In this document: piece after piece, positions 34,877 through 42,578 of the stretch
Position numbering within the stretch: position 1 is the first letter of the stretch
How the letters are laid out: each line of letters opens with the position of its first letter
NCBI GenBank assembly: GCA_001179505.1
Contig: CDMY01000221.1
Location: 98,636-162,635 of the forward strand
From: Vitrella brassicaformis CCMP3155
Lineage: Eukaryota; Protista; Chromerida
Direction: 5' to 3'
DNA length: 64,000 bases
Position numbers and translations under genes: made by a program
Notes under the pieces: generated by a model
The model's database searches: none
The model's input: the letters and a program-made list of their open reading frames with translations, nothing else
What the model was told of the DNA's origin: nothing

Positions 34877-37800
34877 ATGGCCGCCTCGTCCGCGGCAAAT
34901 GCAGCTGCCGCAGCCGCCACACCACATGGCATGCGGCCTGCCAAGCGCGAGGAGGCCTTGCGGACAGCCGCCTACGCCAAGCAGCAGGTGCTGAGCAGCG
35001 ATGCTCAGGCCCTCAAGACCCGCCTACAGGAGCGGTACGGCAAAGACAAAGATTCGCCCTTCCTTTACTCTCCGACGCTTGGCAAGGGAGCGGGTGGCGA
35101 GATCGACCCGCTGCGGCAGGCGGGGCTGTGGAAGAGTGTGCGGCATACGCTGTCCCAAGGGTCAGCAGCATATATCTAGACAGCCAGGACAGGCGTTATC
35201 GAGGTGGTTTGACTGTGGTGTTGTGTGTGTGTGTTGCAATGCATGCATTTGCTGTCAGGTGTGGTGCATGCTGGTGTGGAGGCGGTCGAGGTGTGTGATC
35301 ACTTCCACCCGGTGCGCCTGGCCACACCGGCAGACGACAAGTGCTTCAGCCTCCGGTTTAGGGGAGAGAAGCCAATACCAAATACACACCAGGTGAGGTG
35401 CGTGCAGGGCGGTCTGTGTGCGGCACATGGATGGATGGATGGATGGATGTGTGTGTGCAGGTGCATGTAGTGTTGGGTGAGTACGTGGGTCTGGTGCAGC
35501 GGTCTGCCGACCCTGAGGGCGAGTCGGCCGCACCCTGCAGCCACGTCTTCCAGCTGCGCTTCGACCCAAAAGCCTTCACACGCGACGACGACAACCACGC
35601 CGACACAGACAGCACACACAACATGACAAACGGTACACACAACACAACACACACACCAGCCCGCCTGCCTCTCTGTACCTGTGAGTGGATGGCTGTGTCG
35701 GGCCATGTATGACCCATTGCTTGGCCAGGCTGTGGTGCTGTGGCAGCTGAGGAGCTGCCTGGGGACTGTGACTACGTGATAGACGCGACAATGCACCAGA
35801 ATGAGATGACATGCGTCAACCACTATGCGGCGGTGGACGCAGTGGCGGGCCGAAACCTCAAAATCAACGCTCACTGGCACATGGTACGTATTCACTACTT
35901 GTGGGGTGGGTGGGTGGGTGGGGTGGGATGAGGAGTGAGTGCTGCCCAGATCGATGAGATGGATGCATGTGCTGTGCTGAGTGGTTGCGTGCAGGTGTAC
36001 GAGGACGGGTGGCCGCATGTGATTCTCACGAGCATTCCCGGCATCGGCATCAAGGCGGGGGTGAGTCGCCACAGGCAGGCAGCAGCCCGACCTAGCACAT
36101 CGTCGTTGACCCATCTGTGTGGGTGTGTGGTCGTCAGGATGAGATTGTGGCAGACTTCGGGTATCCCTGGTTTCGAAACGTGCGTGAGACGGCCATGAGA
36201 ACACTCACGAGGGAGGTCATCCGCGCAAGGCTCGCCGCCAAAGGTAGGCAGCCACGGCACGATAGATATGGCATACATACACGAACGAACACGGGCACTT
36301 CATTCACCTGGTCTGTGCGTGCCGTGCAGGTGAGGAGATGCCTGCAGAGGGCAGCGAGCCGCAATATGGGTAAGTAAGCTGTACAGTCCATCCATCCATC
36401 CATCCATCCATGGTGTCGTACTCCCCGTCACTGATTCAGTTCCGTGGAGCCTTCCGAGCCCCTGTGCAGCATATGTCGCCAGGCCGACCCACCCGCACAA
36501 CAACACGACCCGTCAGCAGGAGCCGCAGCAGATGGGTGTGAGGCGATTGTGTGTGACGGGTGTGACACGGCCTACCATCTGCAGTGTGTGCGCATCAAGC
36601 AACACGATACGAAACGTGCGGACGCACAGACAGACAGACAGACAGACGGGAGAGATGGAGAAGAGCGTGTGTGTGTGTGTGTGTGTGGCGTCTTTGTGTG
36701 TCAGGGGTGCTTGAGTGGTTCTGCGCCAACTGTGAGGACCTGGCCAGGTACCTTGATCAATGGATGGATGGATGGATGGATGCTGTCAGTACTGCCCACG
36801 GTTGGTTCATCCCTACTCTGCCGTGTCGTGCGCTTCAGGCGTGTGTCAGCCAGTGTGCAGGGGCGTGAGCCACCCACCACCGACAGCCAACTAGCCAAGC
36901 GCCCCCTGCGGCTGCACAAGACCATCAAACAAGCACACAAAATCTCCAATGTGAGCCCACCAACACGCCCAACTCCCACACAACCATCACCTCCATCTCC
37001 CTGATTCCCACAGGCAGCGGCCAAGTGCCCCTCTGGCCCCTCACCACCCCGGCACCAGCAGCAGCAGCAGCAGCAGGAGGGCGGCGTCTCATGGTCTCCG
37101 GCCATTCATGAGTGCGAGGCCCTGAGCGAGCTGAAGGCATGCAAGGAGTGCTACGAGAAGGAAGCCAACGCGGGGCTCCCCGCCTTACACATCAGCTGCA
37201 GGTGCGCACGGACAACAGACAGACACAGGAAGGATGGAAAGAAAGGCACCCTACTAGAATTTGTGGATTGGCGTGTGGGTGCGTGTGTGTCAGGGTGCAC
37301 AAGAAGCATTTCGGTGCCGATTACGACGCCCCCGATGGGTTCCACCAGCCACTCGAGGCCGCACGAGACACCATCGCATGCCGTAAGCCAACCACACACA
37401 GCTACCCCGGCCAACGGACACTCACCAGCCCCTCCCTCCTTATGTGTGAATGCAGTGGAGCAGGCCTTGCGTGACGCCGAGCTTCGTGTCCTCGAAATCT
37501 GCAGCAAGCGTGATGCCCTCGCTGCGCAGCACAAGGCCGTGCAGCAGGAGCTCGCCGCGGCCAAGCGGGAGTGCTTGCGGCTCGACCAGGAGAACCGTGT
37601 GTGGGAGCGGAAGCACGCCGAGCTCGAACAGCGGCTCGGCAAGGGGGCTACGAGACGGAGGAAGCCTGACAGAGAAGGTAAGTGAGCGGATGGCCGGCCA
37701 TTTGCTCCTCTCTCACTCACTGCCTCCATGCCATGTGTGTATGTGTGTGTGTGTGTGTGTCGGTCAGGCGTGTCGTTGGTAGCCCCTGATGCCACCCACT

Positions 37801-39906
37801 GGGTCATCCGAGGGGCGGGTGTGTGGGTGCCGCTCACGGGCATCCGGCTGGAGAAGACAAAGATCTCTCGCCAGTTCACCGATGGCTGGTGGCAGGTACC
37901 CGCACATGACGCATTCATTACAGACACTTCCTTCAGACACACACGAAAAGGGCAGGGCACATACATGTGCTTCCTGCCTATGTGTTCCTTCCGAGGGTAC
38001 GGTGATGGACTACGAGTACGGTTCGTGGCGCATTCAGTATGACGATGGGGACGAAGAAGTGGTCAGCAGGTCAGTGACGCATGTGTTGACACAAACACCC
38101 CGTTACGTTACCCCCACACACGTCACGTCGATCGATGTGTCGTTTCTCTGCGAGCAGCGACGACCTGATGGACATCATCGTCGACGGCACAAGAGACCTA
38201 CACTCATGTACCGTACCCCCCACATGCACCCAGACCAACCCACCCACGCACATGGGCGGATGTCATTTCTGGCTGTGACTGCGTGTGTATTCCCCCCGAT
38301 GGATCGATCAGTGTTTAGCAGGATGGTCATCCCCCGTGGCGTGTGGTCCAACGCCCGCTGGACACATGCCCTCTCGCTCCTACGGAATGACCTCCGCCAG
38401 GGCCAGGGCGAGACAGGGCCCGCTGACGAGGGGTCCGCCGGCAGCGTCGCCCCACCACCCAGCAACAGCAACCGCAGCAACGGCAGCAATCCCGGTGGGC
38501 GGGCTGCCGGCCGCAACCGGCGCAAAAAGCCTGACAATGACGTTGCTGCAGGAGGCAAGGACGGCAAGCCCAAAGGACCAGCACAGCCGTCGGCAGCAAA
38601 GCCCTCCCGGCGCTCCCTCTCGCCCTCCGCCTCTCCATCTCCCCCTCCCGCCCCTGCTCCCGCCGTCAGCGAGATGATCAATGGCCACTCCTCACCTTCT
38701 GCGGCCCACGGAGGAGGCACAACGAGTCAAGTGGACATGACCGAGGCGGCCCTCAGTGCGCTCAAGCAGCTGGGCGGCGACGCCCTCGTCGAGGGCTCCC
38801 TCCACTGGCTGCCGATTACCCAGTGCTTCCAGGCCAAGGCCAAGACAGAGGCGTCCGGCGACGGTGTGCGGCACTTCGCCCCCAGCGGCGTGGCTGACGT
38901 CGAGAGCACATGCAGCCGCGCCCTGGCCTGGCTGCGGGGAGACAACGGGACCACTGCCACAGCGGCTCCCGCACCCGCCCCGACACAGAAGATGGCCCGC
39001 GACAAAGAGGCCGCGAGGATGCCGGGCATGCCAGCCGAGGTCAAATGGAGTCGGAAGCAGCAGGCTTATCGTGTGCCTTACATCGACAACGACACGCAGG
39101 CCCCAAGGCTGCGGGCCTTCACGCTGCAGCGATACGGCACGGTGCAGGAGGCATTCGCCAAGGCGGAAGCCTTCCATGCCAAACACATAGACCGCTATCG
39201 CGCATATGCCAGCCTAAGGGACAAGCCAGACGGCCAGGCTGTGGCGGCCAACGGGCAGCCGGCGGTCGACGGAGGCGAGAAGAACAAACAGGGCGGCGAC
39301 GCTGTCATGAGTGAGACCTTCGATGCGATCATGTCGGGAGGTGATGGGGCACTTGCCGCCCAAAACGGCAACAACAAACGCAAGCGATCCGGTGTGTGAG
39401 AATACACACACAGGCAAACACACAAACATCGACGCATCAGCGCTGCCTGTGTGTGTCCTTCCCTTCCCCTCCCCTCACAGAGCGGTTGTCTGCCTCGCCA
39501 TCGCGCCAGGCGCCCTTGAAGAAGGCAGCCGGGCGCCCCCCCTCCCCCTCGCCGTCCGATCCCCTTCCACAGTCCCGCAAAGATGGTCAAAACAATGGCC
39601 GCCGCTGACGGCAGCGACGAGCCGATGGAAGGAGGCTCAGCCAAGGGACGAGACAGCAAGAGTGATGACGGCCATGGTGCTGGTGGTGATGGTGGTGGGT
39701 GGAGGTGCCCGTCATGCACGTTTGTCAACCAGGAGCAGTCGCGTCTGTGTCAGTTGTGCAATGGGCTGCGCAAGAGGGGCGGGTGGATGTGCATGACCTG
39801 TGGGATGGCCAACGAGCCGGTGGTGGCCGTGTGCGAGCGGTGCGTCAGAGAGGCTGCGGATGCTGGATACCTACTACTGCAGGGAGGGAGGGAGGGAGTC
39901 GTGTAG
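34877..39906 (+). CDS. SET - PHD - coiled coil - Tudor-like - AP2-like - 2x RanBP2 zinc finger chromatin protein
   Basis: SET-like VLGEYVG, YVIDA...NEMTCVNH, GDEIVADFG. PHD LCSIC...IVCDGCDTAYHLQC...WFCANC. Tudor-like KISRQFTDGWWQGTVMDY..WRIQYDDGDEE. ApiAP2-like VKWSRKQQAYRVPY...RAFTLQRYGTVQEAFAKA. Zinc fingers WRCPSCTFVNQEQSRLCQLC and WMCMTCGMANEPVVAVCERC. The 3' end is approximate. Confidence 0.7.
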
Positions 39907-40053
39907 TCTGTATTTGTGGCCATTTTGTGTTGACTTAAAATGTGTGTAAGCACGTGTGTAAGTATATGATTCCATTGTCAAATCATCAAAAGAGAAAACT
40001 CCTTCGCATGCAGCCTTGGGGGGAAGGAGGGGGCGTCTCCCTTCTGCGTCCAG

Positions 40054-40063
40054 GCGAGCTCGC
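40054..40063. promoter_or_regulatory. Palindromic GCGAGCTCGC upstream of the PH-GYF gene
   Basis: Perfect 10-bp palindrome ending 38 bp before ATG 40102. Confidence 0.4.
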
Positions 40064-40101
40064 CAGCGAAAGGGGAGTTCGTCGTGGAGGAAGATACACA
40101 C

Positions 40102-42578
40102 ATGGAGGAGGACGACAAGAACATTGTTCCTCCGCCATACTCGCCGGTTGCAGGTCAGCCAGGACTTTAGAGGGATTGCATCATTGTTCCGTTCTGCCTG
40201 CAGGTGACACTGTCAGGAGGAAGCCGGGCAAGAAGAAGAACAGGGAGGAGAAGAAAGGCGAGAGGCAGCAGAGGCCACCCTCGCGGCAGCGAGAGCAGCG
40301 CAGCAAGAGTCCGCAACCTGAGCTCCAACAGCAGAACGACAATGAGCGACGCAGGCAAGCGCTCCAGAAGACGAGAGGATGCTCAAGTCTGTCGTCTTGG
40401 TTGTTGCTTCTCCTCAGGAGCCAGCGGTACGTCAGCACCGAGCAGCCTGAACCAAACGTCCCAGCATCAACGTCATCTGGCAAGAAGGGCAAGGAGCAGG
40501 GCCAGACGGACCAGCCAAAGCCAGGTACCGTTCCCAGCGCCAAGAGCCGGTCTCGGTTCAGCGTCATCAAGCCAGAAGACTCCCCACCTCCACCGGCATT
40601 CGCCCATGGCGCCTCACCCGCCAGGAGCGGCCCTGAGGGTCAGCCTTCCACACGAGGCATGACATTGGGTGAGGAGACTGCCAAGTTGGCAGAGGAGAAG
40701 CGGCGACTCGAATACGAGATGAAGAAGCTGGCGTCTGAGAGGGAGTGTCTCGAGTTGGAACAGCAGGTCAGGAAGGAGAGGGAGGCCCTCGAGGCATTGA
40801 AGAAAGAGCGACCTGGCCACCAGCAGCAGCAGCATCAGCAGCAGCAAAGGAGCCAGCCGTCCGTCAAGGCCGCCAGCATCCCCTCTGTGCCGCCCCACCT
40901 GGCCGCCCAGCAACCGAGGCGCAACTCTGTCATCATGGCGGAGCACCCCTGGACCGACCCCTCACAGACGCAGGAAGGAGGGGAGACACCCATCCGGAGT
41001 GGCCGCAGAGACACGGAGGCCGATATGCCCGCCGTGCCAGCCCCGGGGCCACATACGACTGTGTACCCATTGACCGAGATATCTGTGTATACAATGGGCG
41101 GCCAGTGCTTCACCGTGTACGAGATCGGTGATGCCATCGACCAACAGCCGGAGGCCCTGGGGTGGTCTCGAGTGGCCGGCGACACGGCAACACTTGCGGG
41201 GTCGCCATTTAATGTCGTAGACGTGTCACAAGACAGGAGGACCTCGATGCGGCGAATCACACTGACGGCCGCGGGCATCCATGCCAGCGAGAAGCCACAG
41301 GGGAAGGGGGCTCCTTCGGAATGCGCCGTGGGCAAGTTTGAGGAAAATGCTCAGACTCCGGTGAGTGAGCTGCAGCAGGAGATGCAGCACCGTCAGGTGG
41401 CTGAAGTGTCGGGATGGGTCAAGAAGAAGGCTCGATATGGGCTCTGGAAGGACCGGTACATGCGTCTGCGGGATGGTGCGCTGCTCTACCACAGCGATGC
41501 CAAGAAGGACAGCACCCCCAATGGTGAGCAGACCGGAGAAAGGCTGTAAACCATAACATAGTTGAGTCTGTGTCTCTTCCTTATGCGTCGTCAGCGGTCT
41601 TTCCCTTCTGGTCACACATTGTCCGGGGCCAGGTGAGCACCCACCGCACGCATCCGTCCATGGCTGGGCGGCTGATGAGTTAGTCCGTCTTTCTGCATCT
41701 CACTAATCAGGCTCATCCAAAGGAGACGCAGCAATTCACGTGAGACACGAGCTACCCGGGAGAACATGTATATGTATGTGTACCCATAGATAATGATCTG
41801 TTTGCTCCCTCTTCTTGCCTCGGTTGCTTAGCGTGAGCTACGACGATCTCAATGGCGACGCGAGAGACCTGCACTTGTAACCAGATAAACCAGAGAGAGG
41901 GATTTAGCGGATGGATGTCCGTCCATCCATCCATCCATCTAGTTCCTCATGTCTGCTGCGTATTCAGTTCATCGCGTGATGCGTCGAGGAGTGGGCAGGG
42001 ATGGGTGGATCTGATCAACAAATACACCATGCGAACCGCCATGCAAATCGCTCTGGTCGGTGAATGAAGACACATACATACAACCAGGGACGGGATTGAG
42101 GAACCGAGGGAGACACGAGACCATGCAGCCAGCCCCATGTGTGTGTTCTCAGTATCACTATGAGGACATTTTGGTGTCGTACAATGAGTGGTACTACAAG
42201 GACCCCGCCAATGTGGAGCGGGGTCCCTTCCCGCTCCTTCATCTTCTATGGTGGCATCAGAACGGCATGCTGTGTGACGCCACCCCAGTCAAGATGCGTG
42301 GCCACCAGTCATTTCAACCTCTGGGCAACGGCGACGCCCTCAGGTGAGGATGAGCGTATCGACGCGGCATGGCAGACTGGCACCGCAGCAAGAAGCATCC
42401 TGTCTCAGAGTAGCCATGTCTGTCTCTGTCGGTGGTCTGTGTGTCTGTGTCTGTGTGCCTGTGCATGTGCAGGGAAGCGGCAGTGCGTTGGCAGCACGTG
42501 TGTGACAGTGAGGACTTCCTGAGGGCGTTCCCCCTGGCCACCAGTGGAGATGACGAGGAACATGAGCGGCAGGACTGA
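40102..42578 (+). CDS. Coiled-coil, PH-domain and GYF-domain protein
   Basis: PH-like VSGWVKKKARYGLWKDRYMRLRDGALLYH...KGDAAI...WVDLINKY. GYF-like EWYYKDPANVERGPFPLLHLLWWHQNGML. Start inferred at MEEDDKNIVPPPY. Confidence 0.7.

What the first reader, a model, noticed from the sequence alone, without database searches (positions are those of the whole stretch)
34877..39906. SET + PHD + Tudor-like + ApiAP2-like + two RanBP2 zinc fingers in one polypeptide
Seen: the exons can be joined in frame across all modules, including the last junction (GT|GTGAGA at ~39396 to CCACAG|T at 39572) that attaches the two perfect W-x-C-x2-C-x3-N-x6-C-x2-C fingers. The segment at 39019-39180 resembles the apicomplexan AP2 consensus (V.W......W...Y......R.F....YG...A...A). 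Inference: a writer, histone readers, a DNA reader and RNA/ubiquitin readers combined in one protein. It mirrors the AP2-oxidase 12 kb away, suggesting this lineage hard-wires AP2 domains onto both methyl writers and erasers.
Basis: partly seen in the sequence, partly recalled or inferred. Interest (0 to 1): 0.75.

Follow-up and report, generated by a model that had tools for sequence, protein, structure and literature searches.

The report
SET10-type chromatin gene with AP2-fold module
This is the already-annotated Vitrella gene for a SET10-type chromatin protein (SET-like, PHD, Tudor) whose tail carries a previously unrecognised AP2-shaped module shared with Cryptosporidium, while the two RanBP2/NZF zinc fingers lie after the stop codon in another reading frame and are not shown to belong to it.

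Summary
The window is Vitrella brassicaformis CCMP3155. The locus is an 18-exon gene, 34877-39608, whose translation equals the public protein CEL94555.1 (1073 aa). A 2889-nt transcript contig confirms 13 of its last 14 junctions.

- **Confirmed:** a divergent SET-like domain, a PHD finger and a PTM/DIR17-type Tudor, in one protein. Its closest relatives are Cryptosporidium proteins and the Babesia protein named SET10, so it belongs to the apicomplexan SET10 family.
- **AP2-like segment (39007-39222):** it fails the AP2 HMMs. It is nonetheless conserved, with three copies in the Cryptosporidium orthologues. A profile comparison with Vitrella AP2 domains gives P 1.9e-4. Its AlphaFold model (pLDDT 84) has only apicomplexan AP2 domains as top PDB neighbours. 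I read it as a cryptic AP2-fold module.
- **Not confirmed:**
  - The real last junction, 39391|39481, leads to a stop at 39606-39608.
  - The two zinc fingers are real and ubiquitin-binding NZF-like, but they sit in another frame downstream. Orthologues and paralogues lack them.

The parts
34877..39608 (+). Whole gene. Eighteen coding exons: 34877-35135, 35259-35392, 35461-35632, 35729-35883, 35995-36060, 36138-36243, 36330-36369, 36440-36615, 36705-36747, 36839-36950, 37014-37201, 37294-37382, 37456-37677, 37768-37895, 37996-38069, 38158-38207, 38312-39391, 39481-39608 (stop 39606-39608).
   Evidence: The translation is identical to P0002 = CEL94555.1 / A0A0G4EGF3. Thirteen of the 14 junctions from exon 4 onward are present in transcript contig L001. 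The fourteenth falls in the contig's 10-N gap.
35264..36239 (+). Divergent SET-like domain (aa 89-296, exons 2-6). The N219-H220 motif is at 35818-35823. The 'ADFG' motif that replaces the usual 'YDY' is at 36150-36161.
   Evidence: Orthologues in Cryptosporidium and in Babesia 'SET10' score E 1e-31 to 1e-35. A family profile against the PDB gives SETD8/KMT5A as 13 of 18 hits, E 0.09. hhalign against genuine Vitrella SET exons gives P 2.7e-5, probability 74%. Pfam SET matches 2 of 9 family members at E 0.006 and does not match this protein.
36465..36733 (+). PHD finger (aa 320-379, exons 8-9) with a long insert.
   Evidence: PF00628 scores 30.7 bits against a cut-off of 24. C320, C323, C349, C352, H357, C360, C376 and C379 are invariant in 10 sequences.
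37134..37327 (+). Conserved K-x-C-x2-C...C-R-x4-H...D motif (aa 462-495). It may bind zinc. No family name.
   Evidence: K462, C464, C467, C483 and R484 are invariant; H489 and D495 are nearly so. No Pfam hit.
37456..37677 (+). Coiled-coil exon (aa 514-588).
   Evidence: Only weak coiled-coil-type Pfam hits: CENP-H, APG6_N.
37803..38179 (+). PTM/DIR17-type Tudor domain (aa about 600-662, exons 14-16).
   Evidence: PF21743 scores 26.6 bits here and 38-40 bits in the Cryptosporidium orthologues.
39007..39222 (+). AP2-fold module (aa 904-975). Strands fall at aa 916-918, 923-929 and 936-942; the long helix at aa 949-974.
   Evidence: BLASTP against the C-terminal module of the Cryptosporidium orthologue gives E 7e-9. 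Each Cryptosporidium protein has three such modules. hhalign against 19 Vitrella AP2 domains gives P 1.9e-4. The AlphaFold model has pLDDT 84.3. The top structural neighbours are all ApiAP2 domains. The Pfam and local AP2 HMMs are negative.
38785..38937 (+). Possible degenerate second module (aa 830-880). Unsupported.
   Evidence: It aligns in register with the module profile, but with P 0.25. The single-sequence model shows low-confidence helices here.
39481..39608 (+). Last coding exon. It encodes a low-complexity tail and ends at the stop 39606-39608.
   Evidence: The junction 39391|39481 is in L001 and in the annotated protein.
39583..39906 (+). Separate 107-codon ORF with two RanBP2/NZF zinc fingers. 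It is in a different frame from the main ORF and overlaps its last 26 bases. Finger 1 is about 39699-39758; finger 2 about 39783-39842.
   Evidence: The pattern matches twice and only here in the window. PF00641 scores 23.5 bits against a cut-off of 27, in two stretches. Finger 1 is nearest to the HOIL-1L, HOIP, TAB2/3 and Npl4 NZF domains, E 3e-4 to 2e-2. The ORF is transcribed on L001 up to 39881. It is not in the protein collection under three possible starts.

Best explanation
The locus encodes the Vitrella member of the apicomplexan/chromerid SET10 family. This is a nuclear chromatin protein built from six parts: a divergent SET-like domain, a PHD finger, a small conserved Cys/His motif, a coiled coil, a PTM/DIR17-type Tudor domain and, near the C-terminus, one AP2-fold module.

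**Likely mechanism (inferred).** The PHD and Tudor domains dock the protein on modified histone tails. The basic AP2-fold module contacts nucleic acid, either DNA or RNA. The SET-like domain then acts on nearby lysines or serves as a scaffold.

**Age of the module.** It is an old feature of the family. Cryptosporidium orthologues carry three copies. The Babesia orthologue and two Vitrella paralogues have none.

**The zinc fingers.** The two RanBP2/NZF fingers downstream form a separate, unannotated reading frame. They are most likely a small ubiquitin-binding protein of their own, or part of a minor splice form. They are not part of the main product.
For: - **Identity.** The genome matches Vitrella brassicaformis in size and contig number. 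The gene equals CEL94555.1.
- **One transcription unit.** Contig L001 carries 13 of 14 junctions from exon 4 to the last exon.
- **Family.** The N-domain hits only a Vitrella paralogue, Cryptosporidium proteins and Babesia microti 'histone-lysine N-methyltransferase, H3 lysine-4 specific (SET10)', E 4e-44 to 2e-31. The domain order is shared in the alignment.
- **SET.**
  - The PDB profile search returns SETD8.
  - hhalign against Vitrella SET exons gives P 2.7e-5.
- **PHD and Tudor.**
- **AP2 fold.**
  - The module is conserved with Cryptosporidium, E 7e-9.
  - The profile-profile comparison gives P 1.9e-4, in register.
  - The model has pLDDT 84.3 and a strand-strand-strand-helix order.
  - The top 12 of 350,542 chains in Foldseek are all apicomplexan AP2 chains, E from 0.018, probability up to 1.0.
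  - Chain identities were checked with an AP2 profile and against PMC11652630.
- **Fingers outside the protein.**. Orthologues end without them. There is no finger ORF near the paralogues.
Against: - Pfam AP2 and a Vitrella-specific AP2 HMM do not detect the module.
- The single sequence against the AP2 profile gives P 0.19.
- A search of 1.84 billion representatives found no AP2 protein, only two spurious repeat proteins.
- The alignment behind the model has 16 rows, and all the rows besides Vitrella come from one genus.
- The SET motif 'ELxYDY' reads 'EIVADFG', so both tyrosines are missing. Catalysis is therefore not assured.
- PfSET10 itself could not be fetched, so the link to it rests on a database name.
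- The zinc-finger ORF is clearly coding and is transcribed on the same contig, so a minor fused isoform cannot be excluded.
Confidence: 0.7

Rival explanations
1. One reading: one polypeptide that also carries the two RanBP2/NZF fingers, made by splicing GT at 39396 to AG at 39572.
For: - The junction is in frame, with a good polypyrimidine tract and acceptor.
- The finger ORF is genuine coding sequence and lies on the same transcript contig.
- It has no annotation of its own.
- Codon-usage scoring favours the finger frame from 39574 onward, at +15 bits.
Against: - The only transcript uses 39391|39481 and keeps 39481-39881 unspliced.
- The annotation ends at 39608.
- Cryptosporidium, Babesia and the Vitrella paralogues have no such fingers.
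- ATG 39583 has A at -3 and G at +4, as an independent start codon would.
Confidence: 0.17
2. The 'AP2-like' segment is not related to AP2. It is a lineage-specific small sheet-plus-helix unit, or a protein-interaction motif, whose resemblance is convergent or an artefact of the model.
For: - There are no HMM hits.
- It has no sequence relatives outside the family among 1.84 billion representatives.
- hhalign probability is only 47%.
- Four of the five models have mean pLDDT of 68 or less.
Against: - Two independent structural searches put only AP2 domains at the top.
- Each alignment covers exactly the AP2 domain of its hit: 9i05_Xn residues 496-561 against the HMM range 499-551, and 9hqv_Yn residues 355-417 against 360-410.
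- The sequence profile aligns in the same register.
- The tandem repetition in Cryptosporidium is typical of ApiAP2 proteins.
Confidence: 0.2
3. The N-terminal domain is a pseudo-SET: it has the SET fold but no methyltransferase activity. The protein would then be a reader or scaffold rather than a writer.
For: - Both tyrosines of the 'ELxYDY' motif are replaced (A267, F269), invariantly across the family.
- Pfam SET misses the protein.
- A Cryptosporidium annotation calls the region an 'apicomplexan-specific globular domain'.
Against: - The N-H motif and the GEY and GDE motifs are kept and invariant.
- PfSET10 is described in the literature as a histone methyltransferase (PMC11580448).
- From my own knowledge, Tyr-to-Phe changes at this site in other SET enzymes alter product specificity rather than abolish activity.
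Confidence: 0.3

Closest known systems
Apicomplexan SET10 family (PfSET10, PF3D7_1221000; Babesia microti 'SET10'; Cryptosporidium 'N-terminal apicomplexan-specific globular domain plus PHD domain' proteins)
   Same: The N-terminal SET-like domain is shared at 31-35% identity over 95-99% of its length. The order is the same: SET-like, PHD, Cys/His motif, coiled coil, Tudor. The C-terminal module is shared with Cryptosporidium.
   Different: - Vitrella has one module, or perhaps a second decayed one, against three in Cryptosporidium and none in Babesia.
- It is shorter: 1073 aa against about 1470 in Cryptosporidium and 2329 in PfSET10.
- PfSET10 itself was not compared here.
ApiAP2 / AP2-ERF DNA-binding domain (Pfam PF00847; PDB 3IGM, 6SY0; the T. 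gondii mitoribosomal AP2 proteins in 9G6K, 9FI8, 9I05, 9HQV)
   Same: The predicted three-stranded sheet packed on a helix matches. These domains are the best structural neighbours. The aromatic and basic pattern on the strands aligns in register.
   Different: - It fails the family HMM.
- It lacks the near-invariant G-V...W-x-A-x-W...G signature of the 19 Vitrella AP2 domains.
- It has a much longer C-terminal helix and a conserved P-x-P lead-in.
- It sits inside a chromatin enzyme rather than a transcription factor.
SETD8/KMT5A-type SET domain
   Same: It is the best solved match to the family profile. The alignment runs over the N-H motif and the GDEL..D.G core.
   Different: E is only 0.09. 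Large inserts are present, and the two channel tyrosines are replaced by Ala and Phe.
Ubiquitin-binding NZF fingers (HOIL-1L/RBCK1, HOIP/RNF31, TAB2/3, Npl4)
   Same: Finger 1 has the W-x-C-x2-C-T-F-x-N...C-x-hydrophobic-C pattern, and these are its nearest solved relatives.
   Different: Finger 2 lacks the T-F pair. The fingers lie in a separate frame after the stop of the SET10-type gene.

Membership tests
SET-domain lysine methyltransferase (PF00856) | Significant match to a SET profile | tested here: met
   There is no Pfam hit for this protein, and 2 of 9 family members match at E 0.006. The family profile against genuine Vitrella SET exons gives hhalign P 2.7e-5, probability 74%. In the PDB profile search 13 of 18 hits are SETD8, E 0.09.
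SET-domain lysine methyltransferase (PF00856) | N-H-(S/C) cofactor-binding motif | tested here: met
   N219 and H220 are invariant in 10 sequences and align to the N-H of SETD8.
SET-domain lysine methyltransferase (PF00856) | Tyrosines of the ELxF/YDY motif | tested here: not met
   The motif reads E-I-V-A-D-F-G. A267 and F269 take the two tyrosine positions of SETD8 and are invariant in the family.
SET-domain lysine methyltransferase (PF00856) | Methyl transfer to lysine | not testable with these tools
   This needs an enzyme assay.
Apicomplexan SET10 family | Closest relatives of the catalytic-type domain are SET10 proteins | tested here: met
   Only SET10-type proteins were returned, E 4e-44 to 2e-31, including Babesia microti 'SET10'.
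Apicomplexan SET10 family | Shared domain order: SET-like, PHD, then Tudor | tested here: met
   Pfam on five relatives and the full alignment.
Apicomplexan SET10 family | Direct orthology to PfSET10 (PF3D7_1221000) | not tested
The link rests on the Babesia annotation.
PHD finger (PF00628) | Profile match above the cut-off and Cys4-His-Cys3 ligands | tested here: met
   30.7 bits against 24. All eight ligands are invariant.
PTM/DIR17-like Tudor (PF21743) | Profile match above the cut-off | tested here: inconclusive
   26.6 bits against a cut-off of 27.2 for this protein. The aligned region of the Cryptosporidium orthologues scores 38-40 bits.
AP2/ERF, ApiAP2 (PF00847) | Match to the family HMM | tested here: not met
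   No hit at E up to 1 for the segment or for the whole protein. It is not among the 150 best AP2 matches of the genome. An HMM built from 19 Vitrella AP2 domains finds nothing at this locus.
AP2/ERF, ApiAP2 (PF00847) | Profile-profile similarity | tested here: inconclusive
   The module alignment against the Vitrella AP2 alignment gives P 1.9e-4, probability 47%, 43 columns in register. The single sequence gives P 0.19.
AP2/ERF, ApiAP2 (PF00847) | Three-stranded antiparallel sheet packed on a C-terminal helix, with AP2 domains as nearest structures | tested here: met
   The model has pLDDT 84.3 with elements E-E-E-H. Foldseek's top 12 and VIA's top 5 are all ApiAP2 domains. This rests on a predicted structure, not a solved one.
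AP2/ERF, ApiAP2 (PF00847) | Sequence-specific DNA binding | not testable with these tools
   This needs EMSA, PBM or DAP-seq.
RanBP2/NZF zinc finger (PF00641) | W-x-C-x2-C-x3-N-x6-C-x2-C pattern and profile match | tested here: met
   There are two exact pattern matches, the only ones in the window. Pfam gives 23.5 bits, below the cut-off of 27, E 3e-5, in two stretches. PDB NZF domains match at E 3e-4.
   The fingers lie in a different frame after the stop 39606-39608, both in the transcript and in the annotation.

The most novel reading that the evidence does not exclude
SET10-family chromatin enzymes of the chromerid-apicomplexan lineage ancestrally carry cryptic AP2-fold modules: three in Cryptosporidium and one in Vitrella. 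These modules bind DNA or RNA sequence-specifically. The enzyme would then be recruited to its target loci directly, without a separate ApiAP2 factor. That would offer a testable route to how SET10-type proteins find particular genes.
Probability: 0.3. Interest if true: 0.7.

Novelty: new variant of a known kind. Interest (0 to 1): 0.5.

Why it matters
ApiAP2 proteins are the main known sequence-specific regulators in apicomplexans and their algal relatives. Chromatin writers are thought to be brought to their targets by such factors. A writer-type protein with its own AP2-shaped module, conserved from a free-living alga to Cryptosporidium, would be a direct fusion of targeting and modifying functions. 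It would also add to the count of AP2-fold domains that the standard HMMs miss.

The gene itself, with its SET-like, PHD and Tudor parts, is already annotated and ordinary for this family. The attractive five-module fusion with RanBP2 fingers does not hold.

Tried and rejected
- **Pfam exon by exon.** The SET exons were too short to score, so I moved to the public full-length protein.
- **Word searches.** Searches with the large exon and with the whole protein returned only the protein itself.
- **Large representative search.** Residues 808-980 found only the protein itself plus a phage-fibre repeat protein and a TIG-repeat protein. I rejected both as chance matches multiplied by repeats.
- **PDB sequence searches.** The SET region, the AP2-like region and the module profile gave nothing usable for AP2.
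- **Own-genome search with the module.** No paralogue.
- **Second AP2-like stretch.** My idea of a second module at aa 830-880 was not supported: P 0.25 and low-confidence helices.
- **'Alternative acceptor at 36453'.** I noted this early, but it is an artefact of a 10-N scaffold gap in the transcript contig.
- **Metagenome scans.** Scans for more transcripts and for more family members found nothing.
- **Exact look-ups of the zinc-finger ORF.** Three possible starts all failed.
- **Annotated contig.** A look-up of the contig carrying the annotation failed.
- **Codon-usage scoring.** Scoring the overlapping frames at 39481-39605 was not decisive.
- **Vitrella paralogues P0005 and P0016.** They have no module.


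Full report
**Source and gene model**

The window is contig C221:98636-162635 of a 72.7-Mb, 1064-contig genome. The public protein that matches the locus is CEL94555.1 / A0A0G4EGF3 of Vitrella brassicaformis CCMP3155, named 'PHD-type domain-containing protein', 1073 aa (P0002).

The family scans of the window were done exon by exon, by reference. All full-length work used the database protein P0002 by its id. Inside a script I compared an 18-exon coordinate list with P0002 for equality only. The translation is identical.

A 2889-nt JGI transcript contig (L001, sample 3300017148) aligns to 35757-39881 at 100% identity.
- It contains 13 of the 14 junctions from exon 4 to the last exon.
- The fourteenth junction falls in a 10-N scaffold gap of the contig.
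- All 17 introns are GT-AG and 63-123 nt long (for the splice sites; for the final coordinates, which shift one acceptor by 3 nt).

The start (34877) and most exons are right. The errors are these:
- Two exons were missed: 36839-36950 and 38158-38207. The second encodes the end of the Tudor domain.
- The junction '38070>38320' is really 38069|38158 followed by 38207|38312.
- The junction '39396>39572', which was meant to attach the fingers, is absent from the transcript. The transcript splices 39391|39481 and then runs unspliced to 39881.
- After the real junction the frame reads 42 low-complexity residues and stops at 39606-39608, as in the annotation.

**The N-terminal domain is SET-like and places the gene in the SET10 family**

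Pfam gives no SET hit for the whole protein. A word search restricted to aa 85-300 returned 11 proteins:
- a Vitrella paralogue;
- Cryptosporidium proteins of about 1470 aa (one is annotated 'protein with N-terminal apicomplexan-specific globular domain plus PHD domain');
- Babesia microti 'histone-lysine N-methyltransferase, H3 lysine-4 specific (SET10)'.

Their E-values run from 4e-44 to 2e-31.

The evidence that the domain is SET-like:
- A profile of nine of these domains, searched against all PDB sequences, returns SETD8/KMT5A as 13 of 18 hits. E is 0.09. The alignment runs over the N-H motif and the G-D-E-L..D.G core.
- The same profile against an alignment of genuine SET exons from this genome gives hhalign P 2.7e-5, probability 74%.
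- Two of the nine members touch Pfam SET at E 0.006.

So the domain is SET-like. It is atypical, however. The two tyrosines of 'ELLYDYG' in SETD8 are Ala and Phe here, invariantly across the family.

PfSET10 is described in the literature as a 2329-aa protein with SET and PHD domains, previously reported as an H3K4 methyltransferase (PMC11580448). I could not fetch its sequence for a direct comparison.

**PHD, Cys/His motif, coiled coil and Tudor**

- The PHD finger passes its cut-off (30.7 bits), and all eight ligands are invariant.
- A conserved K-x-C-x2-C...C-R-x4-H motif (aa 462-495) follows. It has no family name.
- Next come a coiled-coil exon and a PTM/DIR17-type Tudor domain. The Tudor scores 26.6 bits here against a cut-off of 27.2, and 38-40 bits in the orthologues.

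**The AP2-like segment: evidence against**

- Pfam AP2 finds nothing in the segment or in the protein.
- The genome has at least 150 canonical AP2 matches. None of the 150 best is on this contig.
- An HMM built from 19 of those domains finds nothing at this locus.
- The single sequence against that alignment gives P 0.19.
- There is no paralogue in the genome.
- A search of 1.84 billion representatives found only the protein itself and two repeat proteins. I reject those two as chance.

**The AP2-like segment: evidence for**

The segment is conserved.
- It matches the C-terminal module of the Cryptosporidium orthologues, BLASTP E 7e-9 over 92 residues.
- It shares motifs such as S/T-V-x-E-A-F and H-I-D-x-Y with that module.
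- Each Cryptosporidium protein has three such modules.

Sequence and structure then point to AP2.
- The alignment of 16 modules against the Vitrella AP2 alignment gives hhalign P 1.9e-4, probability 47%.
- AlphaFold2 with this alignment gives mean pLDDT 84.3 and pTM 0.69, with three strands followed by a long helix.
- A single-sequence run had already given the last two strands and the helix at pLDDT about 80.

The fold searches agree with each other.
- Foldseek against 350,542 PDB chains ranks only apicomplexan AP2 chains in places 1-12. They are T. gondii AP2VIIb-2, AP2IX-6, AP2IV-1, an AP2-bearing chain labelled RPL22, PfSIP2 and PF14_0633. E runs from 0.018 to 0.6, and the probability for the top three is 1.00.
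- I confirmed what those chains are by searching the PDB with the Vitrella AP2 profile. The matched residue ranges coincide with the ranges aligned to the model.
- The mitoribosome paper describes four AP2 proteins repurposed as RNA binders (PMC11652630).

My reading is an AP2-fold module too divergent for the HMM, with probability about 0.75. The scores are individually modest and the model is a prediction.

A second stretch that I suspected (aa 830-880) is not supported.

**The zinc fingers**

- The two fingers fit the pattern exactly and occur nowhere else in the window.
- Finger 1 carries the T-F pair. It is nearest to the ubiquitin-binding NZF domains of HOIL-1L, HOIP, TAB2/3 and Npl4.
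- The fingers lie in the frame open from 39520 to 39903, with an ATG at 39583 in a strong start context. The main ORF arrives in another frame and stops at 39606-39608.
- Genome and transcript agree base for base over 39480-39881, so a sequencing frameshift is unlikely.
- The Cryptosporidium and Babesia orthologues end without fingers.
- The two Vitrella paralogues have none nearby, and the finger ORF has no paralogue.
- The ORF is not in the protein collection under three possible starts.
- Codon-usage scoring supports coding in the finger frame from 39574 onward. It is ambiguous in the overlap.

I conclude that the fusion is unsupported, at about 0.17. The fingers are most likely an unannotated small protein, or belong to a minor isoform or to the next gene.

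**Relation to the neighbouring AP2-oxidase**

Neither the module profile nor the canonical AP2 profile hits that region.

Another note (s1-205586) reports a further SET10-type gene elsewhere in this genome with an unproven AP2-like end. This kind of observation was therefore made before on other DNA. I did not examine that locus.

**Verdict**

This is a real, expressed and already annotated SET10-family gene. The new element is the cryptic AP2-fold module, shared with Cryptosporidium. The five-module fusion is not supported.

Noticed in passing
window 39583-39906 (+): An unannotated 107-codon ORF with two RanBP2/NZF fingers. It overlaps the last 26 bases of the SET10-type ORF in another frame. 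It is transcribed, has no paralogue in the genome, and is absent from the protein collection.
   Followed up: partly
window 37134-37327 (+), aa 462-495 of P0002: A K-x-C-x2-C...C-R-x4-H...D motif that is invariant from Vitrella to Cryptosporidium and Babesia. It has no Pfam family and may be a small zinc-binding unit specific to SET10-type proteins.
   Followed up: no
window 39942-41549 (+): A long downstream open frame with a coiled-coil stretch and the start of a PH domain (PF00169, 20.9 bits, below its cut-off). Whether the finger ORF is spliced into this gene is unknown.
   Followed up: no
window 35428-35450, 36385-36410, 36760-36782, 36628-36650: Several introns of this gene hold short (GGAT)n or (GACA)n microsatellites and (TG)n runs.
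   Followed up: no
window 38153-38158: Tandem acceptor GAG|CAG|. The transcript and the annotation use 38158. Using 38155 instead would add one serine.
   Followed up: yes
L001:340-349: The transcript contig is a scaffold with a 10-N gap that replaces 23 real bases. This made the source's gene caller split the ORF into two.
   Followed up: yes
G000:C1019:182721-186775 and G000:C1028:4051-7991: Two near-identical SET10-type paralogues (CEM39041.1 and CEM39131.1, 801 and 823 aa) without the AP2-fold module. Weaker SET-like exon matches occur on C336, C441 and C887.
   Followed up: partly
P0006-P0015 (Cryptosporidium orthologues), e.g. P0006:1047-1118, 1172-1243, 1395-1466: Three tandem AP2-fold-like modules in proteins that do not come up in a text search ('PHD', 'methyltransferase') of the C. 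parvum ApiAP2 paper (PMC4117751); its gene list was not checked by gene id.
   Followed up: partly
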